A stretch of 64,000 nt of DNA from Podarcis muralis (lineage: Eukaryota): assembly GCF_964188315.1 (NCBI RefSeq), contig NC_135667.1:24304001-24368000 (forward strand). The letters run 5' to 3'. Of the stretch, positions 12,101 through 61,234 are shown one piece after another (position 1 is the stretch's first letter; the number at the start of each line of letters is the position of its first letter). The notes under the pieces are model-generated. The model worked only from the letters and a program-made list of their open reading frames with translations. It ran no database searches and was not told the origin of the DNA. Both the position numbers and the translations under genes were made by a program.

Positions 12101-13599
12101 AAACAAACAAACAGGAACAGTTGAAGCCATCTGGGAAGGAGGTGAAGAAAGATAGTCTGCATGGATGAACTGGGGATTTTAAACCTTCGGACTAATGCAA
12201 ATGACACTAATCAGGAGACTATTTTTCACATAGCTAATATTAGTATAGGGGCAGCACACACAACAGTCTCTTGTGAATAAAGAAAACATCAGGCTGGACA
12301 CAAGTTGGTTGCCATTCAGGGCAGTATGCCAGACAGAGTCTTGTAGCAAAATGAAGTATTGAGCTAGATGCAAAGCTATGGTGCCCCAGAGGGGACAGTC
12401 TCCTGTTTGACAGAATTGAAAAAGACTGTGCTGTTGAAACAGATTTTTTTCCCAACTGGTGTTCTGCTTTCAGATTTATATTTCTATTCTCTAACATTGC
12501 TTGCTTGGGGGTTTCAGAGCTGCCTTTGGCTGTATCTGCAACAGGATTGTAGTGCACCTCTTTTTATCTTTATTGGTGTAGTTTATGCTATATATATTGA
12601 GTACAATGCAATACCTTTATATAATCAAAATATAGTTTTTAAACCAGCTGTATACTCTTCTATCTTCTGGTGTGCTAGATATCTGGCTGCATGACATACA
12701 TATATCATACCTGCTCTGCACACAATTTGTGGCCTATGAAACTGAACTCTGCTCACCAGCCAGGGATGTGAGGAACCTCCATTTTATTCTGGGTCTTAGA
12801 CAATGGTGGGGAATGACATAGCATGACATGACATATGGCTAGTTGGCTGGATTTGTCTGGGGGGTTTCAGAGCTGCCTTTGGCTGCATCTGTAACAGGAT
12901 TGTAGTGCACCTGTGTGAGGTCATGATGTGCCCCCATAGCTTAAAAAAAGATCACAGTGCTCTGCTGAAGAAAGAACATTGGTAGACACGTGCAGTGCCT
13001 AACGTTGAACCAAAACAGAGTTAGTGTGAGTTTTTCATTGTCTTTTTAAAGAGGTTCATCTATCATTTACATAATAAACACAAGAAAGGAAAAAAAAGAG
13101 CCTTCCACTGAGCACAGTCCCAGTGCTTTTCAGATATGAATATTTCTCTTTCAAATACAAATACCTTCCAAAATGTTTTCATGACTGGTGGGCTATAGCC
13201 ATGTTCTTTTGAAGTCGAATAGAAAATAAAGCAGAAACATGCTTTAAAAAACTTTTCTGATTTGTGTTATTTCTTTGGTTTTCAAACTTGTGAGTGAATC
13301 TTTTCCATTAGTATCAAGTCCCGCACCAGTATAATGGTGTATAATTTCCATGGTCAAGGAGCATCTCGTCTGCCCACACACCCACAAAAACCTCTTGGCA
13401 CTTTTAACATTCAGAAATTTATTGTGGCATAAGCTTGCATGAAGTGTCAACCTCCGTGGGGAGATACATAGGATGGGTGGGAACTGCTTTTAAGTAGGAC
13501 TCTTCCATATGCTGGACATGTAGTGTGTGCATGCTGCAATTATATGGTTATCCACAATTTGAGGGATCCTGTCTACTAACGGTGGTGTTTTGCCTATCA

Positions 13600-14351
13600 A
13601 TGCTTCCCTAATGGTGAAGGGATTTCCCCAATGCCTAGCAAGGATTCTTAGGAGCTGCCATTGCATCAGCCTCTGCAACAATGTCACTGTTGAATTAATT
13701 CCCTTAATTACTTAAACACTGCAGTTCCCCTGCCCCCATTCCATACGGGTATGATAAGAAACAGAAGTGGAATCCTTGCCTGGGTCTCACTGTGCATGCA
13801 GCATGAGAAAGACAGTATGAGAAAAGTAGACAGTATCAGCAATTCATGATGAGAGATAGCCTAGCCTAAGACTGAAAACTTTGAAGGTGGTCTATTGCTC
13901 TTAGAAAAGTGACCTATTTTGGCAGTGGCTCTGGGCTGTTAGTGCTGTGCAATTCGGGGGAAGAAGGAGGTAATCTTTAGCGACCATCAGAAGTCAGCAG
14001 CATACTTCCACCATCAAATAAGTCTCCCCTCTTAGTGCTTTTAAAAGACGCTTTTCCTCTAACATGCACCTTAGATTGTAAATTTTGGTCTTTTGCTTCT
14101 GTTTTTTTGGCAGTGGATGTGGGCTGTTAGTGCCATGCTATTAAGAGAAAGAGGGAGCTAATCTTTAGCAACGAATATACTTCCACTATCACATTCATCT
14201 GCCTCTCTCGGTGCTTCTTTAAATAACCTTTTCTTCTAACATGCACCTGTGAAGCAAAAGGAGCTGTGAATCCAACAGAGAAGAGACTGCGATGGATCTC
14301 TCATACTGGCATGAAATGTGAGGAGACAGCTTCTAGGAGCCACAGGTGAGA
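13600..14351 (+). promoter_or_regulatory. Putative OR promoter / non-coding first exon module (copy upstream of the OR4 relic and OR2)
   Basis: Non-coding block conserved upstream of OR4 (25810-26369), OR5 (30540-31141) and OR6 (34320-34935); ends in donor CAG|GTGAGA at 14346. Confidence 0.5.
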
Positions 14352-15290
14352 GCTGAGTGCATGGTGGGGACCAAAGGTGGAGAAACTACCCCAGAAAGGA
14401 GCATGATGTGTCCCTCACCAGATATACTCCCCCTCTCCGAACAACTTCTTCTACTGTTCTTTTAAACCCTGTACACAGTATGGGATTTATGCTATTTCTT
14501 TCCGAAGCTGATACATTGCATGTTAGACTGATGAGGTAAGAATGGGAACAGAAATAATAGCTAGTGAGTCAGGAGTTTGAGGAATCACTTGCAGCTTAGG
14601 ACAATATGGTAAAGTAAACTCACAAGAATCGTATTGACTTGGATCTTTGAGAAATAAAATGAATAGGTTTCCAGAAGAAATGTTTCAACTCGTTCCATTC
14701 TCCTTTTCTGTGACCCTTGAGAAGCCACTTTGTGGAAGGGGCTCCTCACAACATGGGTCCCATGCCTTTGCTATTTTATTTATTTATGAACCTTTTGCCT
14801 TTGAAAAGATCTCAGGGTGGCCAACATATGGTTCAGTGACACTCTGCCTTCCAGGTAGTGTTCATAGCGAAACCAGTTTAGCTTCAGGGTATTTTCTGAG
14901 CACCAAAACACAACAGGCATTCTATCAACCTAATGTCTGAATATTGTTTTAAAGACTAAAGTCTGAAACCAGGGAAGTGTGAGGAGATCTGTGCCTGTAC
15001 AGTAGGACTTTCCTAGGTTGCTTTCCTCACTGCAAACCACTGAACTCTCTGTACTGAAGGACCCTTAGAAATGCAATGTGAAGAGACTCAAGTTGGCTGC
15101 AGGTGGTTGGGGACTTATTAGTGGAAGTGCCTTTCTGTTGACGCAAAATGTGTTTGGATCCAGTAAAAAGCTACATTGGGAAAACTGAAATTGTGATATC
15201 ATTCATTTAACAATAAAGTAATAAAAAATATCATACATGGAAGTAAATATAATTCTAACATTAATGAAAAAATAAGACTTTAGAATGAAC

Positions 15291-15386
15291 ATTAACAATT
15301 TTCTACTACTGGAAATTTTGAGGGACCAAGAATGGCAAATTTTGCACTTTGTGATCTTCTTAGGAGTATACCTGACTATTCTGATG
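15291..15386 (+). pseudogene. 96-bp relic of a deleted OR4 paralog (N-terminus and TM1)
   Basis: Reads INNFLLLEILRDQEWQILHFVIFLGVYLTILM versus OR4 codons 7-38 IDNFLLMGFSGDQEWQFLHFVIFLAIYLTILM (27575-27670), at the collinear position in the duplicated block. Confidence 0.9.
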
Positions 15387-15568
15387 TTGCTATTTTGTAG
15401 TGAGAACACACTTTAAAGAAATGCTGTATTGAATGTTCAGACAATATAAGTTAATATCTATGAAGATTAATGGTATTTCCCCCCCCCCCCATTCTATAGG
15501 TTTCAATTCCTGGCTTCTGATGACTGGCAATCTGTGCTACTGTACCTCTTGAGCATGAGGGAGAAGTA

Positions 15569-16519
15569 ATGTCTAATATAACAATAATCAATGATTTCCT
15601 GCTTCTGGGATTTTCTAACCAACGAGAGTTTCAACTTTTACAGTTTGCAATCTTCTCAGCAATGTATCTGGTTATACTTACAGGAAATCTGATTCTCATA
15701 ATTCTAGTAGCCCTCAACACCAACCTTCAGACCCCAATGTATTTCTTCCTTGTCAATTTATCAATAGGAGAACTTGGCTCCACCTCTGTCATTATTCCCA
15801 AATCAATGGCCAATGCGCTCATGAACTCAACACTGATTTCATATTCTGAATGCGTGACACAAATGCTTTCCTTTGTTTTTTTCCTGTCATCGGATGTGTT
15901 CCTCCTCACGGTGATGGCCTATGACCGATATGTGGCCATCTGCCACCCACTGCATTATGCGTCTGTGATGAAGTGGGGAAGATGCATCCAACTGGCAGGC
16001 GGATCGTGGATGGCAGGTTTGCTTAACGCTGCTGTGCATACTGGCACTATTTTTTCACTGCCCTTCTGTTCCAACGTTATCAATCAGTTCTTTTGTGAAA
16101 TCCCACACCTAATGAAGATCTCATGCGCTGATTCATACCTCAATGAAATTTGGACACTGCTCTTCAGTTGCGCATTAGGTATTGGCTGCTTTGTGTTCAT
16201 CGTCTTGACCTACGTGCAGATCTTCAGCACAGTGTTGAGCATGCAGTCCATGGCAAACAGGCAAAAAGCCTTCTCCACTTGCATTCCCCACCTCATTGTT
16301 CTCTCTGTCTTAGTTGGCACCATTCTTTTTACTTATCTCATGCCAGCCTCCATCTCTTCATACAAGCTGGACCAGATGCTTGCTGTGATATATTCTGTGG
16401 TTCCTCCAATGATGAACCCAGTAATCTACAGCATGAGGAATAAGGATGTCAAAGCTGCCCTGGGGAAGCTGTTTTACTGGAAGATTTCAAGCAAGAACAC
16501 CATGCTTCCTTTTCACTGA
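15569..16519 (+). CDS. Olfactory receptor OR2, family 14-like, 316 aa
   Basis: All OR motifs intact (PMYFFL, MAYDRYVAIC, KAFSTCIPHL, PMMNPVIYSMRNKD). Confidence 0.96.
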   Translation: MSNITIINDFLLLGFSNQREFQLLQFAIFSAMYLVILTGNLILIILVALNTNLQTPMYFFLVNLSIGELGSTSVIIPKSMANALMNSTLISYSECVTQMLSFVFFLSSDVFLLTVMAYDRYVAICHPLHYASVMKWGRCIQLAGGSWMAGLLNAAVHTGTIFSLPFCSNVINQFFCEIPHLMKISCADSYLNEIWTLLFSCALGIGCFVFIVLTYVQIFSTVLSMQSMANRQKAFSTCIPHLIVLSVLVGTILFTYLMPASISSYKLDQMLAVIYSVVPPMMNPVIYSMRNKDVKAALGKLFYWKISSKNTMLPFH

Positions 16520-17347
16520 TAACCCTGCTGCTTACTCGTGTTAAATTATGGAATAATTTAACATAAAACTTATGACATTTCCCGCTTTATTTTCACTGTA
16601 TTGCATTTTAGCATTGCATAATATATCGAATTCAAATTGTGAGTTATTATTAATATCACTGGGAATGTAAAATGTTTGTGTTGTATGCACGGTAAGTCCT
16701 ACTTAGAAGTGACACCTTAAAAGTAATAAACATAAATTGGGGTAATTGATTTTAATGCGTTACTCCAAATAAAACTGAACTGAACACAACCCTAACTCTG
16801 CTTCAGTGTAGTCCCCCCCCCCCCCTAATCACTTAAAGTGGAAGCAATATTTCCATATTGGACAAGCATTTGTTTCTGGGACAACACTTTCATGCAAAAG
16901 CCACTTGTTATTGTTTTCTGATTTTTGTGTGTGTGGGGGAATTTCAATATTATTTTAAAAAATGGAAATATAATACATAACCTTTGAGTCTATGCTGCCC
17001 CTGGGGTAGGTATCCTTGTTGCTCTACCTAGTTATATAGTTTTCAAATTGTTTTCAGAAAGTTCACAGAAGAACAAATTTATGGTGACATCATCATTATC
17101 AACAACTAACAATAACAATAGCAACAACAACAAAAGGATGGGCTTCACAAGGACTGTAGCTGCTGTAGAGGACTGTAGCTCAGCAGAGAGGGCTCCTCCT
17201 TTAAATTTATTTTTATCTGTGGCATTTTAAATTATGGGGTTTTTGTGTGTGTGTTTTTCTTTGTTGGGGGGTGGGATGGACATTTGGGTGGGACTGGGAA
17301 TAGGTTTAGTTTTAATGTAATTGTAAATTGTTTTTCTTATTATTAGT

Positions 17348-17398
17348 TTCTTCTTCTTCTTCTTCTTCTTCTTCTTCTTCTTCTTCTTCTTCTTCTTC
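17348..17398. repeat. (TTC)n microsatellite
   Basis: Direct reading. Confidence 0.95.
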
Positions 17399-17419
17399 TG
17401 TATAGTTCGTGTTTTGCTT

Positions 17420-19402
17420 TTAAGGGGAGAGGGTCAGGGCTGCCTGGGAGTGGGCCCCAGCCAACAGAATGGCTGGGGCAGGTTCCACGGGAGGATGCAC
17501 TGGGACACCCGATCTCAGTGATCATGGTTAGGAGGAGGAGCTATGCTAAGACCAGACCATGTCATTACCCAGGAGGCGGGTTTAGTCATTATTTGAAGAC
17601 TATCCCTGCCTCCAGGTCTGGGCTTGATCGGAAAGATACCAGAATCAATGACTTGATTGGGGATGGAGGACTTGACATGGCATGTGTAACAGAGACTTGG
17701 TTGAATGAAGCAGATGGGCCTGTTCTTGCCACTGATTGTCAACCAAGTTTCTATTACACACAGAAACCCAGATCATATGGACGGGGTGGGGGTGGGGTTG
17801 CTGTGATTTTTAGGAAGTCATTAGCTTGCACCAGGCATCCTATTGGGAAGACCCAGTTTTCTGAGTGTGTGTTCTGGAAGTTGGGCAATAGGGGCAGTAC
17901 AGGATTCCTTTTGGTGTACCAACCTCCCCACTGCACCAAGGATTCCTTGCCCGAGCTGCTTCAGGTTGTGGCGGATGTTCTCCTGGAGACACCTAGTTTG
18001 GTTGTCCTAGGGGATTTCAACATGCCAACATGACCTTACAAGGGGTACCTCGGGACTACGTGGAAAGCATGGCCTCCAAGGGGCTGTCCCTGGATATGTT
18101 TGGCCCAACTCAGTCACAAACATGCTTTAGACCTGGTGTTCACCTCTATGGATGTGGGTGATCTGACACTAAATAAAAGCAAAACAAAAGAAGTGTCATG
18201 GTTGGATCACTTCCTGGTGCACCTGGACTTCTCCATGACCCTTCCCCTCTGCAGGGAGGTGGGCCCAATTCAGATGGTCTGCCTCTGCCACTTAATGGAT
18301 CCAAATGCTTTCCAGAGAGTGGTAGGAGATGTTTTATCCCATGTTAATAGCCTTTCAGCTGATTCCCTGGTGGCCCGCTGGAATGTGGAGTTAACCAGGG
18401 CTATCGACTGTCTGGCTCTGAAGCGCCCTCTCTGATTGCATGGAGCCCAGACAGCTCCATGGTTTTCCCCAGAGCTGAGGGCAATGAAACAATTGCTGAG
18501 ACGGCTAGAGCGCCGGTGGCAGAAAACTCATTCTGAATCTGACCGGACACAGGTTAGAGCTCAACGTTAAGCCTACCAAGTGGCGATAGCAATGGCAAAG
18601 AGGATCTTCTTCACTGCCTCTATTGTATCTGCAGAAAACAGCAGCAGGAGACTCTTTCAGGAGGTTCACAACCATCTTTGCCACCAGGGCCTGGTAATGA
18701 CCCCAAGATCTCCTGCAATGATTTTGCAATGATTTTTGCAAATAAAGTCACTTAGATTTGGAAAGAGGTACACCCCACCATGGGAACAGGTCCAGGGCGG
18801 AAGAGTCCTAGAGTTTTGTCTAGTCAAGTTGCATGGGATCAATTCCAATCTGTTGCCTCCAAGAATGTGGACAGGCTGCTTGGATGAGTGAAGCTGACCA
18901 CCTGTCTCCTTGATCCTTGCCCATCCTGGCTCTTAAAAGCGAGCCAGGAAGGGCTGGGTGATAGGCTCCATGGGGTGGGGAATGCTTGCCTCTCCTCTGT
19001 GAGGGAGACTTCCCAGACCCGCTGAAAGAGGCGGTCATTAAACCACTTCTTTAAAAAACATCTTTGGACCTGGCCAATATGGCCAACTATCGCCCAGTCT
19101 CATATCTTCCATTCTTGGGCAAGGTGTTTGAGCAGGTGGTTGCTGAACAACTCCAGGCATGCCTGGAGGATGCAGACCATTTGGATCCCTTCCAATCGGG
19201 ATTCAGGCCTCATCAGTGGACTGAAATTGCCTTGGTCGCACTGGTTGATAATCTCTGGCAGCCTAGGGACAAAGGTGAAAGCTGTTTCCTAATTCTGCAT
19301 GTCTCTCTCAGCAGCCTTTGATACCATTAATCATAACATCCTTCTGGACCATCTAGGGGAGCTGGGAGCTAGGGGCACCGTTATACAGTGGTTCTGCTCC
19401 TT
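17420..19402 (+). mobile_element. Degenerate L2/CR1-group LINE (APE endonuclease plus N-terminal part of RT), 3'-truncated
   Basis: CVTETWL, GGGVAV, LVYQPP, VLGDFN (endonuclease); YRPVSYLPFLGKVFE, DPFQSGFR, SAAFDTINH (RT); multiple stops and frameshifts. Confidence 0.88.
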
Positions 19403-20491
19403 CAGCACAATGCAAGAATAAGGGCCTTGTATGATGAAAAATGCTTCAAAGGAGTGCATGTAAGAGTGACACTGTTTTGTCTCTAGGGCTTTGCTGCAGA
19501 GTTGCACAGAACCTTCAGGTAGTTAATCCCTAGGAACTATTCTTACACTTCTTATCCCTTTGCTCACACTCCTTAGCACTACTAGTTCTGCTTGTACCTA
19601 GCAAGACACACAGCTTATGCTTGCACAACGACAGGTTGCTTCCTTCAAACGTCAAAGAAATAGGAATTTAATGTAAGTACATTAAGTAAATATGGACATT
19701 CTGTTTGCTGCCCTGAATAATGAATGGTAGATGAAAGGATGATTGAAGGAGTGGATGGATGGAAAAAGTGATAAATATCATGTTATATGGCAAGTTAAGA
19801 TTCAGGGAGAATTTCCAGCATCCAGCTGGAAAATATTTGTAGGGAAAGACAGATTTAAAACTGTTATCAAACCTCTCTCTTTCTCTATGGTTTCCTTTGC
19901 CTCAGTATTTAATTTTACTTTTGCATTTCTGTACATGTCTATTTCTGATCCCCCGCAAACCTCCTTCACTTCTAATCAATCCAGATCCACTCTATACATC
20001 AGTGTATTGTGTGAATCTAATCCCTTAGTGATCCCCTGTCATGCACTTTGATCTTCTTCTGACATAAGTGCATTTAGCTGACATTGTATTTTCACTCCTT
20101 TCTGAGTGCCTGTTCTCAGAAGGCATGTTATTTGTGGGGTTTGCAAACTGCAGCCAAGCAGACATCATGCTCCATTTGACATTTACCATGCAATTTCCTT
20201 TCATGCCTCAGCATGGGCTCATGTATTGTGTAAATATTGTGGGGATAGTAATGGATAGCAATACATACTTCTGCTAAGCATGTTTTCCTTTCTTAGGCAT
20301 CCTGAGCTATTTCTGTCCAGCTCTCCATGGTGCGATATTTGCCAATTGACTATAGGCGAGAGTTCTGATACAGCAAGAACCAGTCATTTACGTCTATTGA
20401 AATCACAAGGTTTAAAACACAGTTAAACAGGACTGTTGATTACAGTGAAACTTGAGTGCAATTATTTTGTGAAATTTTGGTTCATCTAAGG

Positions 20492-20626
20492 CAGTGGTTC
20501 TCAACCTGTGGGTCCCCAGATGTTGTTGGACTACAACTCCCATCATCCCTGAGCTCTGGCCTTGCTAGCCAGGGGTGATGGGAGTTGTAGTTCAACAACA
20601 TCTGGGGACCCACAGGTTGAGAAAGG
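20492..20626. mobile_element. Palindromic hAT-like MITE
   Basis: Long internal inverted repeat (tctcaacctgtgggtccccagatgttgttg ... caacaacatctggggacccacaggttgaga); absent at the paralogous site near 8990. Confidence 0.82.
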
Positions 20627-20631
20627 TATTA

Positions 20632-21267
20632 CCCTGGTGGTTCCCTCACTGCGAGAAGCAAAGTTACAGGAAACATAGGACCCTTGTACCTATGGGACCG
20701 CCTCTCCTGGTATGCCCTGCAGAGGACCTTAAGGTCCATAAATAACAACACTTTGGAAGTCCTCAGCCCCAAGGAGGTTAAATTGGCCTCAACCAGCGCT
20801 AGGGCCTTTTCAGCTCTGGCCCCAGCCTGGTGGAACGCGCTACCGCAGGAGATCAGGGCCCTGCAGGATTTGACATCTTTCTGCAGGGCCTGCAAGACGG
20901 AGCTGTTCCGCCTGGCCTTTGAGCTGAATTCAGTCTAACCCCCCCTCCTCATTTATTTATTTTTGATGGAACCCCTTATATGGGATTTTTATATAAATTT
21001 TCCCTCGCTCTTTTTGCTGGCCCATGTAGGACCAGCATGGATAGTTTGGCCCCGGTGAATAGTTGATTTTTTCTCCTCTTATGGCAGTGATCTATAGGCT
21101 ACCACTAAAATGAAGCTGCATTTTAAGCTGCATTTAAAACTATATTCTAACATATTTTAATCACCTTTTTTTTTGTTTTTTGTTTTAAAAATGTTTTTAC
21201 TGTATTTTACTCAGTGTTAGCTGCCCTGAGCCCAGTCTTGGCCGGGGAGGGTGGGGTATAAATAAAA

Positions 21268-21310
<43 letters not shown>

Positions 21311-21541
21311 CAAGCAGACGGCCTTCTCGGTAGTGGTGCCCGCCCTGTGGAACACCCTCCCATCAGATGTCAAAGAAATAAACATCTGACTTTTAGAAGA
21401 CATCTGAAGGCAGCCCTGTTTAGGGAAGCTTTTAATGTTTAACAGACCATTGTATTTTAATATTTTGCTCGAAGCCACCCGGAGTGGCTGGGGACACCCA
21501 GTCAGATGGGTAGGGTATAAATAAATTATTATTATTATTAT

Positions 21542-21555
<14 letters not shown>
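20632..21555 (+). mobile_element. L2 family B 3' fragment (20632-20674 plus 21311-21555) split by a nested L2 family A 3' fragment (20675-21307)
   Basis: ORF 20684 has the L2 C-terminal motif RAFSALAPAWWNALP...KTELFRLAF and an (ATT)n tail. The host element resumes after a 3-bp AAC overlap and ends in (ATT)n(ACT)n. Confidence 0.8.
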
Positions 21556-21574
<19 letters not shown>

Positions 21575-21713
21575 CATAGTATGGATTTTTCTCATGGTTA
21601 ACTATGGCTACCTTTGCTTATTGTATAACTGTAGTTGGATCCTGGCTATAGTCTCTTTCATCCCAAACTGCACCCGAGTGAAGCAGAAACAATGGGTATT
21701 ATTCAATGTTTGT

Positions 21714-21962
21714 TAGGCTGACCATATGTCTGGGAATTCCTGGACATGTTCTCTTTTGGGGGTCCTACATGCCCCCCAAGGTAATTTTACATTTTAAAGC
21801 AAATGTCCCAGATTTGGGGGGGGGGGGGGTTGTGTGTGCTTGGGCAGCTCTGGTTCAGGCAGGGACTCTGGTGCAGGCAATCTGGGCTCTGGCTCTGGTT
21901 CTGGCATGGCAGAGGGGCTATGGGATGTCCTGATTTTTACCTCTGGAAATATGACAAGCCTA
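21714..21962. mobile_element. Non-autonomous hAT-like element; left-deleted paralog at ~9079-9279
   Basis: Imperfect TIRs taggctgaccatat / atatgacaagccta. Confidence 0.5.
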
Positions 21963-22842
21963 AATTAGTCCTCCTCAGATTAGACCTGTTGAAATGCGTG
22001 GGGTGACTAAATTAGGTGAATTAATTTCAGTGAGTCTGCTTTGAGTAATCCTTAGTTGAATATTTCCCACATGAATTTAAACAAATGCTGATATGCAGCC
22101 TTTCATAGATTTCCCTGATTCAATGACATATTAGATTGAATCAGTGTTTAATAGAATATAGATATATATATGCATTAAATCAGAGACAGATAGTAGGAAA
22201 AAGAGATAGACTGCAGGTGCATATGAACAATGATGGTGGGTCAGAGCAGTGATGCCTTCAGCTCAGCATAGTGTCTCTCCTCTGCCCCAAACAAGCTTGA
22301 TGCAGATGAGAAATGCACACAGACACTATGAAAGGCATGGATATTCCCTCTTGTTTCACTCTGACAGTCAGATCTATACTGCTTCTGAATATAAAGCAAA
22401 TCATTCCTAGCTTTCAGGAAATAACCCCACTTAGCAGGGAATAAGCCCTATTGTCTTAATTCTGAGTAGATGTGGTGAGGTTTTTCAAACTGCTCTACAG
22501 AAAGTGGAGATTTCAGGAAGAGGCTGTATGTGAAAATTGGGGGTCAAACTGTTTGTTATTTAGCTGTGCTGTTCAGTTTAGGGATTTTTATTTATTTTTT
22601 ACACAAATGGTGAGCATGCTGCAACCTCTACCTTACAGTTGTCTCTAAAAATATCACTAAGTTAGAATATGTCTCTAGACCCTCCATGTGCCCATATTTT
22701 CCAGCGACAGTCCTGGATTTAGAGAAGCTGAGACTTCCAGTGGGTATTGAGTTGGCCATTGCTAGATACTGGATGGAACCATATTCTTGCACAAGCAACT
22801 TTTATAATGGTCTCTGTTATTCCCCCAACAGACTGAGAAGAC

Positions 22843-23784
22843 ATGTCTAATGTAACCATCATAAGAGATTTCCTGCTAATGGGATTTTCAGAGCAAAGGG
22901 AACTCCAGATCTTACACCTTGCAGTATTCACAGCAATGTACATGGCAATTCTCATTGGAAACTTCCTCATCATCATTCTGGTAGCTAGAACTACCCACCT
23001 TCAGACCCCAATGTATTTCTTCCTTGTCAACTTATCAGTTGTTGACCTTGGATCCACAACCGTCACCATTCCCAGATCAATAGCTAATGCCCTGATGAAC
23101 ACAACACGTATTTCTTATTCTGAATGTGCTGCACAAATGCTATTGTTCCTCTTCTTCATGTCATCAGACATTTTCCTCCTCGCTGTCATGGCCTATGACC
23201 GGTATGTGGCCATCTGTCACCCACTGCACTATACCTCTGTGATGAAGTGGGGAAGGTGTATTCAGCTGGCAGGTGGGGCATGGGCAGCAGGCTTCCTTAA
23301 TGCTGCTCTGCACACAGGTACCATTTTTTCACTGCCCTTCTGCTCCAACATCATCACTCAGTTCTTCTGTGAAATACCACACATGATGAAGATATCCTGC
23401 TCTGATCCATACTTCAGTGAAATGTGGGCCCTTCTCTTTAGTTCAGCCTTAGGTCTTGGCTGCTTTGTGCTCATTGTCACATCCTACGTGCAGATCTTTA
23501 CTGCAGTGCTGAGAATGTCCTCCAAGGCAAGCAGGCAGAAAGCCTTCTCTACTTGCATTCCCCACCTCACTGTTGTCTCTCTCTTACTTAGTACAGGTAT
23601 CTTCTCCTATGTCATGCCAACCTCCAGCCCTTCATATAATCTGGATGAAGTGCTTGCTGTGATATATTCAGTGATTCCTCCAATGATGAATCCGTTAATT
23701 TACAGCATGAGGAATAAGGATGTCAAAACAGCCCTGTGGAAGCTGTTTTACCAGACACTTCCAAACAATAAATCAGTTCCATAG
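22843..23784 (+). CDS. Olfactory receptor OR3, family 14-like, 313 aa; duplicate of OR1
   Basis: OR motifs intact; near-identical to 10610-11551 and has the same acceptor context (cccaacag|actgagaagacATG). Confidence 0.96.
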   Translation: MSNVTIIRDFLLMGFSEQRELQILHLAVFTAMYMAILIGNFLIIILVARTTHLQTPMYFFLVNLSVVDLGSTTVTIPRSIANALMNTTRISYSECAAQMLLFLFFMSSDIFLLAVMAYDRYVAICHPLHYTSVMKWGRCIQLAGGAWAAGFLNAALHTGTIFSLPFCSNIITQFFCEIPHMMKISCSDPYFSEMWALLFSSALGLGCFVLIVTSYVQIFTAVLRMSSKASRQKAFSTCIPHLTVVSLLLSTGIFSYVMPTSSPSYNLDEVLAVIYSVIPPMMNPLIYSMRNKDVKTALWKLFYQTLPNNKSVP

Positions 23785-25809
23785 TTTAAAAACTACCACT
23801 GCCACCACTACCACTGAGGTGTATGCCCTTTCTATACCTGCTTAAAATATCAAGGAAATGGGTGGTTAAGGCACTTTATTGTTCACACCCCTTAAACAGG
23901 GAACACTTTCTCAAGGGTTGCCTATTATGCTTGCTTACAAACTTGGTACTATGCATCAATGCTTTGCCCTGGCTTTTGGGATGGGGGAGGAGACATGTAT
24001 CCAGAAAAAAATCCACAGGTGCAGCAGCTTCCTCAGTCACATGCTTCATATAGCCATGATGAATTCCTGCCTGAACACATCTGTTTAAGGCACTTCGCTT
24101 CCCTGCCACAATCACAATTGTAGAGAATCTCCAGGCAAGAATTCTACAGGTTAGCCACTTTCCCAATCCCTTGCTACAGACGTAGATGATGAATTTCTGC
24201 CTTTGACATCTGTACAAGGCACCCTGCTTCTGGCACATTCCACCTACTATAGTAAGTGTGGCAACCCTATGTGACAACATTTAAGTGTAATGGTAGTGAC
24301 CATCCCCTGCTTGCATCCGCATTTCACCTGCATGCTGTCCAAAGCATATTTTTCTAATGTACCACCTCAGTGCCTCATTCATACATATATACATATAGTG
24401 GTTCTTATTGGCATGCAGTCTCCTGTTTGACAGAATTGAAAAAGACTGTGCCATTGAAACAGATTTTTTTCAACCTTCAGATTTATATTTCTATTTTCTA
24501 ACATTGTTTACTTGGGCCTCGTTTTATCTTTATTAGTGTGGTTTATGCCTTATATATTGAGTACAACATAGTACCTTTATATAGTCAAAATGTAGTTTTT
24601 AAACCAGCTATATCCTCTTCTGTCTTCTGGTGTGCTAGAAATCTAGCTTCATGACTTTCTTATATCAGACCTGCTCTGCACACAATTTGTGGCCTATGAA
24701 ACTGAACTCTGCCCACCAGCCAGGGATGTGAGGAACCTTCATTTTATCCTGGGTCTTAGACAATTGTGGGGAATGACATAGCATGACATGACATATGGCT
24801 AGTTGACTTGATTTGTTTTGGGGGTTTCAGAGCTGCCTTTGGCTGTATCTGCAACAGGATTGCACCTCTGTAGAAATGTGCCTGCACATGAAAGCTCATA
24901 CCAAGAACAAACTTAGTTGGTCTCTAAGGTGCTACTGGACAATTTTTAATTTTTTAAAAATATATATTTCTACTGTGTCAGACCAACACGGCTGCCTACC
25001 TGAATCTAGAACCAAGGATTACAGTGTACCTGTGTGAGGTTAAGATGTGCCCCTATATCTTAAAAAAAGATCACAATGCTCTGCTGAAGGAAAGAACATT
25101 GACAGACACGTGCAGTGCCTAAAGCTGAACCAAAACAGAGCTAGTGTGAGTATTTTATTGACTTTTTAAAGGGGTTCATTTATCATTTACATAATAAACA
25201 CAAGAAAGAAAAAAAGAGCCTCCCACTGAGCACAGTCCCAGTGCTTTTTAAATAACACTAGTGTCTCAACAAATGAAACTGATCTGTAGAAAATGTAACT
25301 TGAAAAAGAGACATTGCACATACCTTTGCAAACCAAGAAATCTCTAATTAAAAATATATATGAATATTTCTCTTTCTAATACAAATACCTTTCAAAATGT
25401 TATGACTGGTGGACTATAGCCATGTTCTCTTGAAGTTGAATTGGAAATAAAGCTGAAACACGTTTTACAAAACTTTTCTGATTTTGTGTACTTTCCTGGG
25501 TTTTCAACATTGTGAGTGATTCCCCCCATTAATATCAAGTCCCACACCCATATAATGGTGTATAATTTTCATTGTCAAAGAACATCTCATCCACCCACAC
25601 ACCTACAAAAATCTCTTGGCACTTTTAACATTCAGAAATTTATTGTGGCATATATCTCTGTGGGGAGATACATACTGTAGGATGGGTGGAAACTGCTTTT
25701 AAGCGGTGCTCTTCCATATGCTGGACATGTAGTGTATGCATGTTGCAATTCTATGATTATCTGCAATTTGAGGGATCCTGCCTACAACGGTGGTGTTTTG
25801 CAGGCCTAT

Positions 25810-26369
25810 GATTGCTTCCCTAATGATGAAGGGATTTCCCCAATGCCTAGCAGGGATGCCGAAGAGCTGCCATTGCATCAGCCTCTGCAACAATGTTACT
25901 GTTGCATTAATTACTTAACCATTGCAATTCCCCCGCTCCAATTCCATATGGGTATGATAAGAAACAGAAGAGGAATCCTTGCCTGGGTCTCACTGTGCGT
26001 GCAGCATGAGAAAGATAGCCTGAGAAAGGCAGACAGCAGCAATTCATGATGAGAGATAGCCTAAGACTGAAAACTTTGAAGGTGGTCTATTGCTCTTAGA
26101 AAAGTGACCTATTTTGGCAGTGGCTCTGGGCTGTTAGTGCTGTGCAATTCGGGGGAAGAAGGAGGTAATCTTTAGCGACCAACAGAAGTCAGCAACATAC
26201 TTCCACCATCAAATAAGTCTCCCCTCTTAGTGCTTTTAAAAGACGCTTTTCCTCTAACATGCACCTGTGAAACAAAAGGAGCTGTGAATCCAACAGAGAA
26301 GAGACTGCGATGGATCTCTTATACTGGCATGAAATGTGAGGAGACAGCATCAAGGAGCCACAGGTGAGA
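25810..26369 (+). promoter_or_regulatory. Putative OR4 promoter / first exon module
   Basis: TAATGA homeodomain-type site near 25820; donor CAG|GTGAGA at 26364. Confidence 0.5.
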
Positions 26370-26549
26370 GCTGAGTGCATGGTGGGGACCAAAGGAGGAT
26401 AAACTACCCCAGAAAGGAGCATGACGTGTCCCCCACCAGACACATTCTTCCTCTCCAAACACCCCATACATACCACACGACTTCTACTACTTTTGTTTTA
26501 AACCCTGTACATAGTATGGAATTTCTACTATTTATTTCCTAATGTGATA

Positions 26550-26783
26550 CAGTGGTACCTCGGGTTAAGTACTTAATTCGTTCTGGAGGTCTGTTCTTAA
26601 CCTGAAACTGTTCTTAACCTGAGGTACCACTTTAGCTAATGGGGCCTCCCGCTGCCGCAGCCGCACAATTTCTGTTCTCATCCTGAAGCAAAGTTCTTAA
26701 CCCGAGGTACTATTTCTGGGTTAGTGGAGTCTGTAACCTGAAGCGTCTGTAACCTGAAGTTTCCCTAACCTGAGTTACCACTG
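26550..26783. mobile_element. Tc1/mariner (Tigger-like) MITE
   Basis: TIRs cagtggtacctcgggtta / taacctgagttaccactg; TA TSD on both sides; empty TA site at ~14512 in duplicate copy 1. Confidence 0.9.
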
Positions 26784-27556
26784 TATATCCCCTGTTAGGC
26801 AGATGAGGCAAGATTGGGGACGGAGATAATGGCTTGTGAGTCAGGAGGTTAAGGAATCACCTGCCGCATAGGACCATATGGTAAAGTAAACTCACAAGAA
26901 TCATATTGACTTGGATCCTCAAGATTGATAAAATTAATATGTTTTCATAAGAAATATATGCCTATCCTTGCATCTGTCTGTGACCCCTGAGAAGCCTCTG
27001 TGCCATTTTGTAGAAGGGGCTCCTAATAACATGGGTCCCACACCTTTGTAATTTTATTTATTTATGACACTTTTGTCTTTGTGAAAGAACTCTGGGTGGC
27101 CAACACATGATTCAATGACACTCTTCCATCCAGGTAGTGTTCCTAGCGAAACCAGTTCAGCTTTCTGAGGTGCGAGGAGATCTGTGTCTGTGCAATAGGG
27201 CTTTCCTATGCCTTTTTCCACACTGCTAACACCACACTCTCTGTACTGAAGGACCCTTAGAAATGCAATTTGAAGAGACTCAAGTAGGCTGCAGGTGGTT
27301 GGGGACTTATTAGTGGAAATGCCTTTCTGTTGGCACAAAATTTGTTTGGGTCCAGTAAAATACTATATTGGGAAAACTGAAATTATGAGGTCATTCATTT
27401 AACAATAAAGTAATAAAAAGCACCATACACGGCAGTAAATATAATTCTAAAATTAATGGGGGGGGATAAGACTTTAGAATGAACACACATTGTGTTATGT
27501 GCACGGGATCATTATTTTTCTGCTCTTCTTTCAGCAGCCAAAATCTTATAGATGAC

Positions 27557-28513
27557 ATGTCCAACATAACAATCATTGACAATTTTCTACTCATGGGATT
27601 TTCGGGGGACCAAGAATGGCAATTTTTGCACTTTGTGATCTTCTTAGCAATATACCTGACTATTCTGATGGGAAATCTTCTTATCATTATCCTCATAGCC
27701 ACCAACAGTCACCTGCACACCCCCATGTATTTCTTTCTTGTCAACCTATCAGTGCTTGATGTTGGGTCAACCACTGTCATTATTCCAAAATCAATGGCCA
27801 ATTCCCTCATGAACATAAAGCTGATTTCATATTCACAGTGTGTCACACAACTGTTTTTATTCATCCATTTCCTGTCATCGGACTTCTTCTTCCTCACTGT
27901 CATGGCATATGACCGTTACGTAGCCATTTGTCACCCTTTACACTATTCGTCTATGATGACATGGAGTAGCTGTATCTGGATGGCAAGTGGAGCCTGGATG
28001 GCAGGCTTCCTTTATGCTGCTTTGAACACTGGTACTGTTTTTTCACTTCCTTTCTGCTCCAATGTCATCCACCAGTTCTTCTGTGAAATTCCACACCTAC
28101 TGAAGATCTCCTGTTCTGATTCATACCTCACTGAGATTTGGGCTCTTCTTTTGAGTTTCACAATAGGTCTTGGCTGCTTTGTGTTCATTATCATGTCCTA
28201 TGTTCAGATATTTACTGCAGTGTTAAGAATGCCGTCCATGGCAAACAGGCAGAAAGCCTTCTCCACTTGCATCCCCCACATCACTGTTATCTCCATATTA
28301 GTCAGTACTGCCATTTTTACCCATCTTATTCCAACCTCTGACTCAGAATATAATTTAGATCAAGTGCTTGCTTTGTTGTATACTGTGGTGCCTCCACTGC
28401 TGAACCCAATAATTTACAGCATGAGGAACAAAGATGTCAAAATTGCCTTGGGGAATTTGTTGGGTTTTATTCTTGCTAAAAAGAATAAAAATATGGCTCT
28501 GATTCTCCTATGA
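27557..28513 (+). CDS. Olfactory receptor OR4, family 14-like, 318 aa (start MSNIT at 27557)
   Basis: OR motifs intact. The first 26 codons of ORF 27479 cover a polypyrimidine tract and CAGCAG acceptor (27532-27537); MSNIT matches the paralog starts. Confidence 0.94.
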   Translation: MSNITIIDNFLLMGFSGDQEWQFLHFVIFLAIYLTILMGNLLIIILIATNSHLHTPMYFFLVNLSVLDVGSTTVIIPKSMANSLMNIKLISYSQCVTQLFLFIHFLSSDFFFLTVMAYDRYVAICHPLHYSSMMTWSSCIWMASGAWMAGFLYAALNTGTVFSLPFCSNVIHQFFCEIPHLLKISCSDSYLTEIWALLLSFTIGLGCFVFIIMSYVQIFTAVLRMPSMANRQKAFSTCIPHITVISILVSTAIFTHLIPTSDSEYNLDQVLALLYTVVPPLLNPIIYSMRNKDVKIALGNLLGFILAKKNKNMALILL

Positions 28514-31879: not shown

Positions 31880-32178
31880 GCATAAGGCGAGTGCAGCAGG
31901 TGGTGGAAATCACTAGAATTTGAGGGTGTGGTTAAGTGGAATGTTTTTGTTTGTTTTGTTTTTGCTGCTGTAACATGTGTATGGGTCCAAGCCAAGGAAG
32001 GAAAACAATTCAATGGGAAAGCTAAAATGGTGGTATCATATATTTAACAAAAAAGTAATAGAAATAAATCCTACATGAAAGTTTATAGAATTCTGAAATT
32101 GATGGAAAAAATAAAAAATGTAGATTCTTTTATGTGCAATGAATTGATAATTTTTTTCTGCTCTCCAATAGTCAAACT

Positions 32179-34252: not shown

Positions 34253-34319
34253 AATGGTTGTCAGAATTTTTCTTGGTGTTCCCTAGTATCTTTGATTATT
34301 TGTGGGTGTACAACAATTT

Positions 34320-34935
34320 ACCTAATGATGAAGGAAAATCTTCCATTCCTTAGAATGATGCTAAAGAGCTGGCATTGCCTCAGCCTCTGCTACAATTCAG
34401 CTATTACATTTGTTCCCTTGGGTGGATGACTTAAACATTGCCTCCCTATTCCATGTGGGGATGTTTGGAAACTCAAAAGAGGAGCTCTCTGGGTCTCACT
34501 GAATATTGACAATTGGAAAATGCAATGCAACATAGCCTTAGATTGCAAACTTTGAAAGTAGGCTATTGTAGTCAGAAAAGTCAGCATTGTAGCCACTCTG
34601 TGCCATTAATGCTGAGCTATTCAGTGAAACAGGGAGTAAATCTTTAGAGAACAAAATGATTCAGGTAGATATGTCTCCTATCACATAAGCCTGTCTCTTT
34701 TACTGCTGTTTGAAACAAGTTCTTTCTCCAAGACACACCTGTCAACCCAAGATGAGTTGCTGTGATCTGAGAGAAGAAAGAGAGGAATCACTCACAATTG
34801 CATGGGATGTGAAAGAATTATGGCAAATCTGAGGAAAAAATGGAAAATATACACCTGATTTGTTCACACTTTACTGAGTGAAAGATTTAAAGGTGTCAGA
34901 AAAAGAGAGAGACACCTAGACCAACGAAGGTAAAT
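34320..34935 (+). promoter_or_regulatory. Putative OR6 promoter / first exon module
   Basis: TAATGA near 34324; O/E (EBF)-like TCCCTTGGGT near 34414; donor AAG|GTAAAT at 34930. Confidence 0.52.
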
Positions 34936-55550: not shown

Positions 55551-56553
55551 CAGTGGTAACTCGGGTTACATACTGTCAGAGACTGCCTCCAGGTCCCAGC
55601 TCACAGAGGACCCACGCTAGCCAGCGGTAATATACAAAAGTCTTTATTAAAGTACATTATCCATTTTCAAACCCTAGCGTGCGTCTCTACGTCTAGACAC
55701 TAGACCGGCGAAGCTCCGTCTGAGTCTCCGCCCCCTGTACACCAGCTTAAGACTCTAGCCTTACTCCACCTTTTCCGTCTCTCCTTCCGCCTCTGGGTCC
55801 TACCGCCCCCCGGGGTCCCTTCCTTCCTGGACGCTTCGGAGGCGGACCCCTCGGACTCTTCCCCCTCCCTTCGGCGGGCTTTAGGACCTGGCTCCCTATC
55901 CGGGCTGCTCATTGCGCCACCCTCTTGTACATTTGAACTTGGCGCGCGCGCGCTGCCTCCGACCTTCCTTTTGACCGTTTCCTCGCTTTCTGATGCAGGC
56001 GTGGCTAACCCTGACTCATGTCCTTCCGCTGACGGAAGGCTGCCTGATGCCGATGCCTGGGACTCCTCCCCCCTACTGCTCTCCGGTGGGGAAGCTGGTC
56101 CCGATTTCCAGCTGCTGCTCTCTGAGTCCCCTCTGGCCCCTCCTTCCTGAGGTGTTCCCTCTGGCAACCCCCTAGCTCTGACCACGGGAGCCCCTTTCTG
56201 TGAATCCTCCGATTCGCTGGAGAGACTTAGAGACCTCGGGCGGCTCTCATCGCTCACTTCTCCCTCGGATTCCTCCCCCTCAGTCTCTAATTCCTCCCTT
56301 TCCTGTCCCTCTGCTCCTGAGCCCCTGACACATACGCTTCAGGTTACATACGATTCAGGTTACAGACTCCGCTAACCCAGAAATAGTACCTCAGGTTAAG
56401 AACTTTGCTTCAGGATGAGAAGAGAAATCATGCTCCGGTGGCATGGCACAGTGGGAGGCCCCATTAGCTAAAGTGGTGCTTCAGGTTAAGAACAGTTTCA
56501 GGTTAAGAACAGACCTACAGAACGAATTAAGTACTTAACCCGAGGTACCACTG
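55551..56553. mobile_element. Tigger-like MITE (55551-55573 plus 56331-56553) interrupted by a solo LTR
   Basis: Same family as 26550 and 60193; TA flanks at 55549-55550 and 56554-56555. Confidence 0.88.
55574..56330 (-). mobile_element. Solo LTR (757 bp) of an LTR retrotransposon or ERV
   Basis: TGTCA...TGACA termini; perfect 5-bp TSD CATAC at 55569-55573 and 56331-56335; minus-strand AATAAA at 55643-55648; CpG-rich. Confidence 0.9.
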
Positions 56554-57398
56554 TATTACCAAGAACAAAAAGGCATTCCATATTTCTGACACAGATGTCC
56601 TATGTCCCTCTCCAGGAACCCAAATACAGACCTCTTCCACAATTACATGAATATGCTGTTCATGAGGGTTTGGGGAGAGGGACAGGACTGGAGAGGAGCA
56701 GTTCCCTTGGTAAGTGCATATGATACCTATAAGCTATTCTGGTATGAACTCCAAAACTTTTATTTAGAGCACAATGCTACCTCCCTCCCTCCAATGTTAA
56801 TGGGTGGTGTGGTGTCCGGATGCTGTCAGTGGCTCCTGGCTGGTTGCCCAGGAAAGTATAAAGACAAGGAAAGGTTTCTTACCATCCTTTCTTATCTCAA
56901 TATTTACAGAGAGAGGCTATAGAACCCAGCCTCTTGGATAATGGTGTTGTCCTGAGTGAATCTCCACCCCCGTCTCTCTCACTTCACCATTTGGCACTTC
57001 TACGGGTGTTGCTATGTGCCCTCTGTCTTTGAGCTCTTTGCTCTCTTACTTTCAAGGCTCACCGGGTTCTGGGAGATGGATGGTCTGGGATGCTTTCTAA
57101 TGACACTGTGTCAGCCAGCCACCGTTCCCCTTCTGCCTCCTCCTCCTCCTCTCCCATTATTTCCCAACTTTCCCCCTCATCTGCCTCTGAGCTGTGACCT
57201 CCCGCAAACCACTGTTGTAAATCTACACTGTCTTTCTCTTCCTCCTCCCTGGAAGGGTCAGGAAGGGGAGGCGGTCTCCACCATTCCCCCTCTGCCCAGT
57301 CCCTGACAGGTGGGTATGTCTACTTGGTGACAACACTGAAGTTAAGAAGAAGGAAGGGTTAGTTAGCTTGCCTCCCCCCTTCCTTTTCATGGTGCAGG

Positions 57399-59563: not shown

Positions 59564-60192
59564 TACCAGGAGTAGCCATACAGTGAAGGCCCTGACAAGG
59601 ACCTGTGGTCCATCTGATGTTGCTTTCCTGATCATTAGGGCTGATGGGAGTTGGAGTCCAATGACATTTGGAGAACACAGATTCTTGCCTCTTCATTATA
59701 AATTCTTGTAAGGCTATTTTTATTTTATTTTACCAGAACAGAATGCAGTTTACACTTATGAATTTAATGGATTTATTATCAACCCTTTACCATAAGATCC
59801 CAGGGTAAGTTTACAACCATATAATAATAAACTATTAAAATAAACTTAAAAGTTTACATTCTGATATTAAATATTAAAATAAATTAATTTAACACCGCAT
59901 TAGTAGCCAACAGTGTTACCAGCATAAAGCAAGTCAGTGTGATGAAGCTGGCATAAATTTACACCAGAGCCAAACCCCTTTCAGCATCAGGGATGTTGTC
60001 GCTGCTGTTCTGCCAAAGGTTGGCAGAGGGGAAAACAACCTTTTCAAATAGTGTCCTAGACCAGCTTGTCAGGTCATGTAACTGAGCTGCATGGGCTTAG
60101 AAAACAGACCCCAACTCTCTGGTTCCACACCAAGAAATGGCAACTGAAGCATAATTTAGCAGTTTCTATTATTCTGGATAGTATTTCAGGTA

Positions 60193-60434
60193 CAGTGGTA
60201 CCTCGGGTTACAGACGCTTCAAGTTACAGACACTTCAGGTTACAGACTCCACTAACCCAGAAATAGTACCCCTGATTAAGAACTTTACTTCAGGATGAGA
60301 ACAGAAATCATGTGGTGGTTGTGCAGCGGTAGCAGGAGGCCCCATTAGCTAAAGTGGTACCTCAGGTTAAGAATAGTTTCAGGTTAAGAACGGACCTCCA
60401 GAACGAATTAAGTTCTTAATCTGAGGTACCACTG
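60193..60434. mobile_element. Tigger-like MITE, intact
   Basis: TIRs cagtggtacctcgggtta / ttaatctgaggtaccactg; TA on both sides. Confidence 0.92.
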
Positions 60435-61234
60435 TACTCAAGTGGTTAACACTAAGAGAGGTGATACAGCTGCTGGGATGAAAACTTGCAAAAGGCATTT
60501 GGATTTGAAAGCAAGCATTCTCACTGTGCCTGGATGAGAGAGTTGTTTAAATTAAAGCTTGAATCCAAGCATGTTTTTGTTGTGGAAAATCCATTTGATT
60601 TCCCATTATATGAGAACATATAAAAAAGAAAGCTGGCAAAATATTGCAGGAATGCTCTAGGGAGCTCTTCAGGGGCCCTTTACAAAGACATTTAGAATTT
60701 TGGAGGAGCATGCAAATTATATTGTTTTCAAATGGAAAAAGTTAAGCAAGAGATCTGAGTTTCCTATTCACAGCCATGAGATGTTAAAGTAGCTAACTTT
60801 GGCTGGGCCATACCCATTCACATCTGCTTAAAATGGATAACTATCTTTTTAAAAAATCCTTATTGGCATGATTCATCTTTCCACATTCCCTTTCTCTTTT
60901 GTTTATACTCAATGTAAGTTGCATGGGTGCACATACCTGTCTACACACTAGCCATTATTCACAAAGGGAGGCTTGTGTGCATTTCGTATGGAATGATCCA
61001 AGAGCAAAACAGACTTTCACACTTTCAATTGGCTTCTCTGCTTTAGTCAATGACAACAATATTTATGAACACTGTAAATATTGCTTAATATTTTAATGTG
61101 CCCACTCACTGGCATTCCAAGCAAAACAGAGCTTCTCGTTTTTTTGTCATGAAGTGTAACCAAGACCTATCTAAAGAAAAAAGCATGGGAAACTGACAGT
61201 CATGTGGGTTCTGAAAATTCAGCGCCTTCTTCTA

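What the first reader, a model, noticed from the sequence alone, without database searches (positions are those of the whole stretch)
15291..15571. Possible promoter capture: OR2 sits behind the upstream region of a deleted OR
Seen: copy 1 follows the OR4 upstream sequence of copy 2 until ...tagaatgaac (15290). It lacks the 90 bp holding the OR4 acceptor and ATG (27485-27574), keeps only codons 7-38 of an OR4 paralog (15291-15386), and then reaches the OR2 acceptor (attctatag|15500) about 110 bp later and the intact OR2 CDS. Inference: deletions removed one receptor and probably most of the original OR2 upstream region. The OR4-type first exon (donor 14346 or 14536) would then splice onto OR2. 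This would rewire receptor identity to a different choice probability or zone without changing the protein.
Basis: partly seen in the sequence, partly recalled or inferred. Interest (0 to 1): 0.75.

Follow-up and report, generated by a model that had tools for sequence, protein, structure and literature searches.

The report
Smell-receptor gene behind borrowed upstream region
In a wall-lizard smell-receptor cluster, an intact receptor gene sits 182 bases behind the upstream region and first 38 codons of a different receptor type. This layout is real and shared by three lizard genera, but whether the borrowed region drives the gene could not be tested, and the idea has a known mammalian precedent.

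Summary
Window 7663-15386 (copy 1) is a paralogue of 19211-27670 (copy 2). It ends in a 96-bp piece of an OR4-like gene (codons 7-38, 89.7% identical). It lacks the 89 bp that carry the OR4 acceptor and ATG. A unique 182 bp and the intact OR2 follow.

- The fragment|OR2 junction is not a recent rewiring. Podarcis raffonei, Lacerta agilis and Zootoca vivipara all have it.
- Only the 89-bp loss is a proven deletion, and it is confined to Podarcis.
- The break at codon 38 is more simply the edge of a partial duplication. Copy 1 starts in the middle of a LINE reverse-transcriptase frame that runs unbroken through copy 2. A complete OR4 paralogue probably never stood here.
- The donor at 14346 is conserved in every copy and species. 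The donor at 14536 is GT only in this genome.

OR2 is under purifying selection, so it is expressed. The only upstream DNA common to all intact OR2 genes is the borrowed module plus the 182 bp. That makes promoter adoption plausible (about 45%).

The closest precedent is human OR51E2 splicing from the first exon of the pseudogene OR51C1P.

The parts
7663..15386 (+). Copy 1: derived paralogous segment (LINE-RT stub, OR1, intergenic DNA, OR4-type upstream module, OR4-like stub)
   Evidence: 80-91% identical to 19211-27670. Its left end lies inside a LINE RT frame that is continuous only in copy 2.
10610..11551 (+). OR1, intact, paralogue of OR3 (22843-23784)
13601..13811 (+). Upstream block shared by the OR4, OR5 (inverted) and OR6 modules
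   Evidence: Matches 34318-34501 and 30803-30627 at about 70%.
13866..14071 (+). Recent copy-2-type patch that locally duplicates the TATA/TSS-proximal segment
   Evidence: About 99% identical to 26060-26266 against about 85% for the flanks. Absent from P. raffonei copy 1.
14217..14225 (+). TATA-like motif of the OR4-type module
   Evidence: Conserved in all copy-1 orthologues. Variants occur upstream of OR4, OR5 and OR6. Prediction only.
14241..14345 (+). Putative non-coding first exon of the OR4-type module; donor CACAG|GTGAGA with GT at 14346
   Evidence: Block 14230-14346 is 94-96% identical between copy 1 and copy 2, against about 80% for the flanks. The donor is conserved in all eight sequences. 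Its start is inferred.
14536..14537 (+).
   Evidence: It is GC in P. raffonei, both Lacerta copies, Zootoca and copy 2.
15160..15290 (+). A/T-rich proximal block conserved upstream of OR4-type coding exons; a possible alternative promoter
   Evidence: 87-90% identical to copy 2. Positions 15174-15275 match 32011-32114 upstream of OR5 at 80.8%.
15290..15291 (+). Site of the Podarcis-specific 89-bp deletion that removed the OR4-type acceptor, ATG and codons 1-6
   Evidence: The missing bases are present in copy 2, OR5, OR6, Lacerta I and II, and Zootoca. They are absent in the window and P. raffonei.
15291..15386 (+). OR4-like stub, codons 7-38, decaying
   Evidence: 89.7% identical to 27575-27670. 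Of its 10 differences, 9 change the amino acid, and the LLGFS motif is lost.
15387..15568 (+). Native OR2 proximal region, with branch-point-like TTAAT, a C-rich tract and a candidate acceptor TAG|G at 15499|15500
   Evidence: Unique in the window. Conserved in all five orthologous copies. The acceptor is predicted only.
15569..16519 (+). OR2, intact OR14-family receptor
   Evidence: 316 aa. 99% identical to the P. raffonei XP_053215993 cluster, which carries PF13853. dN/dS is 0.08-0.45.
17518..19404 (+). LINE remnant (endonuclease and start of RT) between OR2 and OR3; the copy 1/copy 2 boundary (19211) falls inside its RT frame
   Evidence: Pfam Exo_endo_phos E=4.9e-12 and RVT_1 E=7.5e-6 (below the curated cut-off). 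Alignment A3.
19211..27670 (+). Copy 2: the original context (OR3, intergenic DNA, OR4 upstream module, first 38 codons of OR4)
27557..28513 (+). OR4, intact

Best explanation
An old partial segmental duplication copied 19211-27670 and placed the copy 182 bp upstream of the OR2 start codon. The copied stretch held a LINE stub, OR3, the OR3-OR4 spacer, the OR4 upstream module and only the first 38 codons of OR4. The OR4-like stub is therefore most likely the truncated edge of that duplication, dead on arrival, and not the remains of a deleted receptor. The event predates the split of Podarcis, Lacerta and Zootoca. It cut OR2 off from whatever lay upstream of -182. OR2 nevertheless stayed intact and under purifying selection in all these lizards. 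The inferred mechanism is that OR2 is transcribed from the captured OR4-type module: a TATA-like motif at 14217, a first exon of about 100 nt ending at 14345, and an intron of about 1.15 kb spliced to 15500. In Podarcis a later 89-bp deletion removed the stub's own acceptor and ATG, which would otherwise compete as a splice site and open an upstream reading frame. Shown here: the anatomy, its age, the direction of copying, and selection on OR2. Inferred: which promoter and splice sites OR2 uses.
For: The junction is shared by P. raffonei, both L. agilis OR2 copies and Z. vivipara. Copy 2 is the original context: the LINE endonuclease and RT frame run across 19211 only in copy 2, and Rhineura has an OR2-flank-like element (16946-17068) next to the OR3 upstream region. 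OR2 groups with OR1/OR3, not OR4. OR2 dN/dS is 0.08-0.45. An argument by elimination also applies. Zootoca has lost 5848-12630, including OR1. In Lacerta the intact OR2 copy lies behind two further ORs. The only upstream DNA common to all intact OR2 genes is therefore 12631-15568. The exon-1 block is 94-96% identical between the paralogous copies, against about 80% for the flanks, and its CAG|GTGAG donor is conserved in all eight sequences. The same TATA-like motif and block lie about 1.1-1.3 kb upstream of OR5 and OR6. A precedent exists for an OR splicing from the first exon of a neighbouring OR pseudogene (PMC7055050).
Against: There is no transcript evidence at all. Among copy-1 orthologues the exon-1 block is no more conserved than its flanks (7-8 differences in 117 bp between the window and Lacerta or Zootoca). 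Its high similarity between paralogues could therefore come from gene conversion. Conversion is active here, as shown by the 99% patch at 13866-14071 and a 3-site copy-2-like patch at 14273-14281. The 182 bp contain a TATA-like motif and TAAT cores and could hold OR2's own start site. An O/E-motif scan was uninformative. Duplication edge against later deletion cannot be settled without an earlier-branching lacertid.
Confidence: 0.5

Rival explanations
1. One reading: a complete OR4 paralogue once stood between OR1 and OR2. A deletion running from its codon 39 to 182 bp before OR2 removed it together with OR2's own upstream region.
For: Deletions do occur at this spot, for example the 89-bp loss in Podarcis and the 5.4-kb loss of OR1 in Zootoca. 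No species sampled shows the state before the junction, so the model is not excluded.
Against: It needs a non-tandem insertional duplication of a longer segment plus a later deletion. No trace of OR4 codons 39-318 or its 3' flank survives in any of four species. A simple tandem version with its junction at 19210|19211 is contradicted by the LINE RT frame running across that point.
Confidence: 0.25
2. The captured distal exon is a relic. OR2 starts transcription close to its coding exon. The start site would lie either in the native 182 bp or just downstream of the A/T-rich OR4-type proximal block (15160-15290), giving an unspliced or minimally spliced mRNA.
For: The 182 bp carry a TATAAG-like motif and TAAT cores that are conserved in all orthologues. 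The proximal block is conserved upstream of OR4 and OR5. The exon-1 block shows no excess constraint among copy-1 orthologues.
Against: Every OR in this group keeps a good acceptor just before its ATG, which points to spliced 5' UTRs. The 15499 acceptor with its branch-point-like TTAAT is conserved in all five copies.
Confidence: 0.3
3. OR2 still uses a far-upstream original promoter, in the V2R-OR1 spacer 5165-7662 or beyond, and splices across copy 1.
For: If copy 1 was inserted, 7662 and 15387 were once adjacent. Long 5' introns are known in OR genes (PMC7055050).
Against: Zootoca has deleted the distal part of that spacer together with OR1. In Lacerta the intact OR2 copy lies behind OR1, another OR2 and another OR3-like gene. 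OR2 nevertheless stays under purifying selection in both.
Confidence: 0.1

Closest known systems
OR genes that share or borrow the 5' UTR exon of an upstream OR, e.g. human OR51E2 splicing from the first exon of the pseudogene OR51C1P (Barnes et al. 2020, PMC7055050)
   Same: An intact OR lies downstream of a dead OR that keeps its own upstream exon. The proposed splice goes from that exon to the intact gene's acceptor. Upstream reading frames in OR 5' UTRs are common (55-86% of genes), so the uATGs here are no obstacle.
   Different: In the mammalian cases RNA supports the junction and the pseudogene is a full-length locus. Here the junction is only predicted and the dead OR is a 32-codon stub fused 182 bp from the gene. 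The host gene also appears to have no other upstream region of its own left.
Standard vertebrate OR gene layout: short non-coding 5' exon(s), a kb-scale intron, and a single coding exon
   Same: OR1, OR3, OR4, OR5 and OR6 each have a good acceptor 7-23 nt before the ATG. OR4, OR5 and OR6 share a TATA-like module about 1.1-1.3 kb upstream.
   Different: OR2's candidate acceptor lies 69 nt before its ATG, and its upstream module comes from the other subfamily.
Partial (5'-truncating) segmental duplication that creates a new promoter-gene combination
   Same: The end of the duplicated segment falls inside a gene, so that gene's promoter and 5' end are placed in front of the next gene.
   Different: No chimeric protein is predicted, because the stub is out of frame and separated from OR2 by non-coding DNA. 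Only regulation would change.
Two-exon (split-CDS) OR genes reported elsewhere in this genome by this scan (s1-172992, s1-188867, s1-184744)
   Same: The OR4-type first exon holds an ATG (14311 in copy 1, 26329 in copy 2). Through the predicted splice this ATG is in frame with the OR4 start, as worked out.
   Different: For OR2 the same ATG is out of frame and would only open an upstream reading frame. No annotated OR4 orthologue carries the extension.

Membership tests
Olfactory receptor, class II, family 14 (Pfam 7tm_4) | Matches the 7tm_4 / 7tm_1 profiles | tested here: met
   The near-identical cluster representative P0001 (99%) carries PF13853 and PF00001. All best hits are named OR14-like.
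Olfactory receptor, class II, family 14 (Pfam 7tm_4) | Uninterrupted single coding exon of about 310-320 codons, kept by selection | tested here: met
   The ORF 15569-16519 has 316 codons. dN/dS is 0.08-0.45 against the P. raffonei, Lacerta and Zootoca orthologues, with codons 114-130 left out.
OR that borrows the 5' exon of a neighbouring dead OR (OR51E2/OR51C1P type) | An upstream dead OR on the same strand that retains its own upstream module and first exon | tested here: met
   The stub is at 15291-15386. The module with a TATA-like motif and a conserved CAG|GTGAG donor is at 14217-14346.
OR that borrows the 5' exon of a neighbouring dead OR (OR51E2/OR51C1P type) | RNA reads or cDNA that join the borrowed exon to the intact gene's exon | not testable with these tools
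No RNA holder is on record.
OR that borrows the 5' exon of a neighbouring dead OR (OR51E2/OR51C1P type) | A usable acceptor in front of the intact gene's ATG | tested here: inconclusive
   TTAAT, a C-rich tract and TAG|G at 15499|15500 are conserved in five orthologous copies. An alternative alignment instead places the OR1/OR3-type acceptor at about 15553, where CAG has become CAT.
Partial segmental duplication junction | A paralogous segment with abrupt ends, one end inside a gene, and the other copy continuing past both ends | tested here: met
   Copy 2 continues leftward as LINE RT and endonuclease, and rightward as OR4 codons 39-318. Copy 1 stops at both points.
Partial segmental duplication junction | A pre-duplication state seen in an outgroup | tested here: inconclusive
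   All three lacertid genera already have the junction. Rhineura has only an OR1/3-type gene followed by an OR4/5/6-type gene, with an OR2-flank-like element upstream and no OR2 within 10 kb.

The most novel reading that the evidence does not exclude
A natural promoter swap between OR subfamilies. For tens of millions of years OR2 has been chosen and transcribed through an OR4-type promoter and first exon acquired at a duplication junction. In Podarcis an 89-bp deletion later removed the decoy acceptor and upstream ATG of the stub. Lacerta (module, stub and OR2 duplicated as a unit) and Zootoca (all other upstream DNA deleted) act as natural deletion and duplication experiments. Together they would let promoter identity be tested against receptor identity in OR choice.
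Probability: 0.4. Interest if true: 0.55.

Novelty: new member of a known kind. Interest (0 to 1): 0.4.

Why it matters
What decides the frequency and zone in which an OR is chosen is still argued: the promoter, the coding region or the cluster context. A receptor of one subfamily that has lived for a long time behind the promoter module of another would be a ready-made natural experiment. Related species carry informative variants of it. Without transcript data it remains a well-documented structural case, and the principle is already known from mammals.

Tried and rejected
- **Reads:** After that, no letters of 15909-15958 were sent to any search tool. OR2 was searched only through its C-terminal piece 15959-16516. 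Those places were masked or left out in local scripts. Full-length database orthologues were used only by their ids.
- **Sequencing runs:** DNA holders come from four studies, and no RNA holder is on record.
- **Simple tandem duplication of 7663-19210:** rejected, because a LINE RT frame crosses 19211.
- **OR2 as a diverged positional copy of OR4:** rejected by the tree.
- **Homology searches for 15387-15568 and 16520-19210 inside the window:** nothing found.
- **Remnants of a lost OR2 copy upstream of copy 1 in Zootoca or Lacerta:** none found.
- **Constraint test among copy-1 orthologues:** no power.
- **O/E motif scan:** below the shuffle expectation.
- **Alignment of OR2's proximal region to the OR1, OR3 and Rhineura acceptors:** ambiguous.
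- **Joined exon-1 plus coding-exon model:**
- **Large representative protein search, structure tools and Rfam:** not needed.

Full report
**What the window is.** It is a reptile chemoreceptor cluster. Two V2R exons lie at 692-1573 (ANF_receptor) and 4241-5164 (7tm_3). Six same-strand ORs follow: OR1 10610, OR2 15569, OR3 22843, OR4 27557, OR5 32179 and OR6 36075. Further ORs lie on the minus strand. The OR2 pieces are identical to an unnamed NCBI protein, P0122. They differ at one residue from the P. muralis protein and at two from the P. raffonei protein. The genome is therefore a Podarcis wall lizard. A protein tree gives (OR2,(OR1,OR3)) against (OR4,(OR5,OR6)).

**The observation.** Self-BLAST shows that 7663-15386 (copy 1) is paralogous to 19211-27670 (copy 2) at 80-91% identity.
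- Near the right end, 14974-15291 matches 27167-27485 and 15290-15386 matches 27574-27670 (89.7%).
- Copy 1 thus lacks about 89 bp that in copy 2 hold the acceptor (exon start 27535) and the OR4 ATG (27557). It keeps codons 7-38.
- Of the 10 nucleotide differences in the stub, 9 change the amino acid, and the LLGFS-type motif is destroyed. This is what a decaying fragment looks like.
- Positions 15387-15568 and OR2's 3' flank 16520-19210 match nothing else in the window.

**Age.** I fetched the orthologous loci through OR2's database orthologues: L001 P. raffonei, L002 and L004 Lacerta agilis, and L003 Zootoca vivipara. I then extended to OR3/OR4 with L005-L007.
- In all three species, window 15290-16685 aligns as one block. 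The stub|182 bp|OR2 junction is therefore shared.
- Lacerta (both OR2 copies) and Zootoca keep the 89 bp, while P. raffonei lacks them. The 89-bp loss is a true deletion, and it is Podarcis-specific.
- In Lacerta I the stub's ATG has become ACG. In Zootoca the stub has an early stop.
- Zootoca has also deleted 5848-12630, including OR1, and has no OR4 or OR5.
- Lacerta has an extra tandem unit, so two OR2 copies each lie behind a module plus stub.

**Direction and origin.** The left boundary (7663 in copy 1, 19211 in copy 2) lies inside a plus-strand LINE.
- An endonuclease domain is at 17518-18030 (E=4.9e-12). An RT frame at 19064-19321 matches RVT_1 (E=7.5e-6, below the curated cut-off), and the match spans 19211.
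- The RT frame is continuous in copy 2 of the window and of Zootoca. Copy 1 starts abruptly within it.
- In the amphisbaenian Rhineura (L008), an element like 16946-17068 (OR2's 3' flank) sits next to the OR3-type upstream region. Only an OR1/3-type gene followed by an OR4/5/6-type gene is present.
- Copy 2 is therefore the original context and copy 1 the derived copy.
- The simplest histories make 15386|15387 a duplication junction. One is a template-switch insertion. The other is a tandem duplication of 15387-27670 followed by loss of the upstream OR2 copy.

**Is the module functional for OR2?** OR2 is under purifying selection, with dN/dS 0.08-0.45, so it must be expressed.
- Given the Zootoca deletion and the Lacerta duplication, the only upstream DNA common to all intact OR2 genes is 12631-15568. 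All of it except the last 182 bp is OR4-type sequence.
- Within it, 14230-14346 is 94-96% identical between the paralogous copies, against about 80% for the flanks. It ends in CACAG|GTGAGA in all eight sequences.
- A TATA-like motif precedes this block. A related TATA-like motif and block lie upstream of OR5 and OR6.
- The GT at 14536 exists only in this genome and is GC elsewhere.
- The candidate acceptor at 15499, with a TTAAT about 26 nt upstream, is conserved in all five orthologous copies.

Several results weigh against a functional module.
- Among copy-1 orthologues the exon block is no better conserved than its flanks.
- Gene conversion between the copies is active. Positions 13866-14071 are about 99% identical to 26060-26266 and are absent from P. 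raffonei copy 1. Three sites at 14273-14281 carry the copy-2 state.
- An alternative alignment places the ancestral OR1/OR3-type acceptor at about 15553, where CAG has become CAT.
- An O/E-motif scan was uninformative.

**RNA evidence.** I worked beside those places afterwards. The central claim is therefore untested.

**Comparison with what is known.** Barnes et al. 2020 (PMC7055050) document 7 human and 7 mouse OR loci that share 5' UTR exons with an upstream gene. One example is OR51E2 splicing from the first exon of the pseudogene OR51C1P. They also report upstream reading frames in 55-86% of OR genes. The mechanism proposed here would be a further example. It is unusual in that the borrowed module seems to be the only upstream region the gene has, and it comes from another subfamily.

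**Verdict.** It is a new member of a known kind and of moderate interest.

Noticed in passing
window 13866-14071 vs 26060-26266: A patch of about 205 bp in copy 1 is about 99% identical to copy 2, against about 85% for the flanks. It makes a local tandem duplicate of the TATA/TSS-proximal segment and is absent from P. raffonei copy 1. This looks like a very recent copy-2-to-copy-1 transfer.
   Followed up: partly
window 14311-14345 and 26329-26363 (with 27535-27559): The OR4-type first exon holds an ATG. Through the predicted splice it is in frame and open with the OR4 start, giving a possible 19-residue N-terminal extension. In Zootoca copy 1 the third codon is a stop. No annotated OR4 orthologue carries the extension. 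The joined model was not searched.
   Followed up: partly
window 692-1573 and 4241-5164; L001 1-6193: V2R exons lie just upstream of the OR cluster. The P. raffonei annotation holds a 489-aa gene call that joins a V2R NCD3G exon to the OR1 coding exon.
   Followed up: no
window 17518-19404: A plus-strand LINE remnant (endonuclease and start of RT) lies between OR2 and OR3. It seems absent at the matching spot in Rhineura.
   Followed up: partly
window 26544-26785 (also 56337-56559 and 60191-60436): A SINE-like insertion lies in the copy-2 module just upstream of the GC version of the second donor. It is shared with P. raffonei and absent in copy 1, Lacerta and Zootoca.
   Followed up: partly
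window 19409-19910 and 22075-22418 (copy 1: 7873-8348 and 9397-9745) vs L008 5248-5718 and 7833-8177: Non-coding blocks upstream of OR3 and OR1 are about 70% identical to the Rhineura locus. They are candidate promoter, 5'-exon or enhancer elements of the OR1/OR3 type.
   Followed up: no
L002/L004/L007 (Lacerta agilis) and L003/L006 (Zootoca vivipara): Lacerta has an extra tandem unit (stub, OR2, spacer, OR3-like), probably formed by exchange between the two modules. Zootoca lacks OR1, OR4 and OR5.
   Followed up: partly
window 13631-13811 vs 30803-30627: The OR4-type upstream block occurs in inverted orientation upstream of OR5. This agrees with the scan's note on an inversion there.
   Followed up: no
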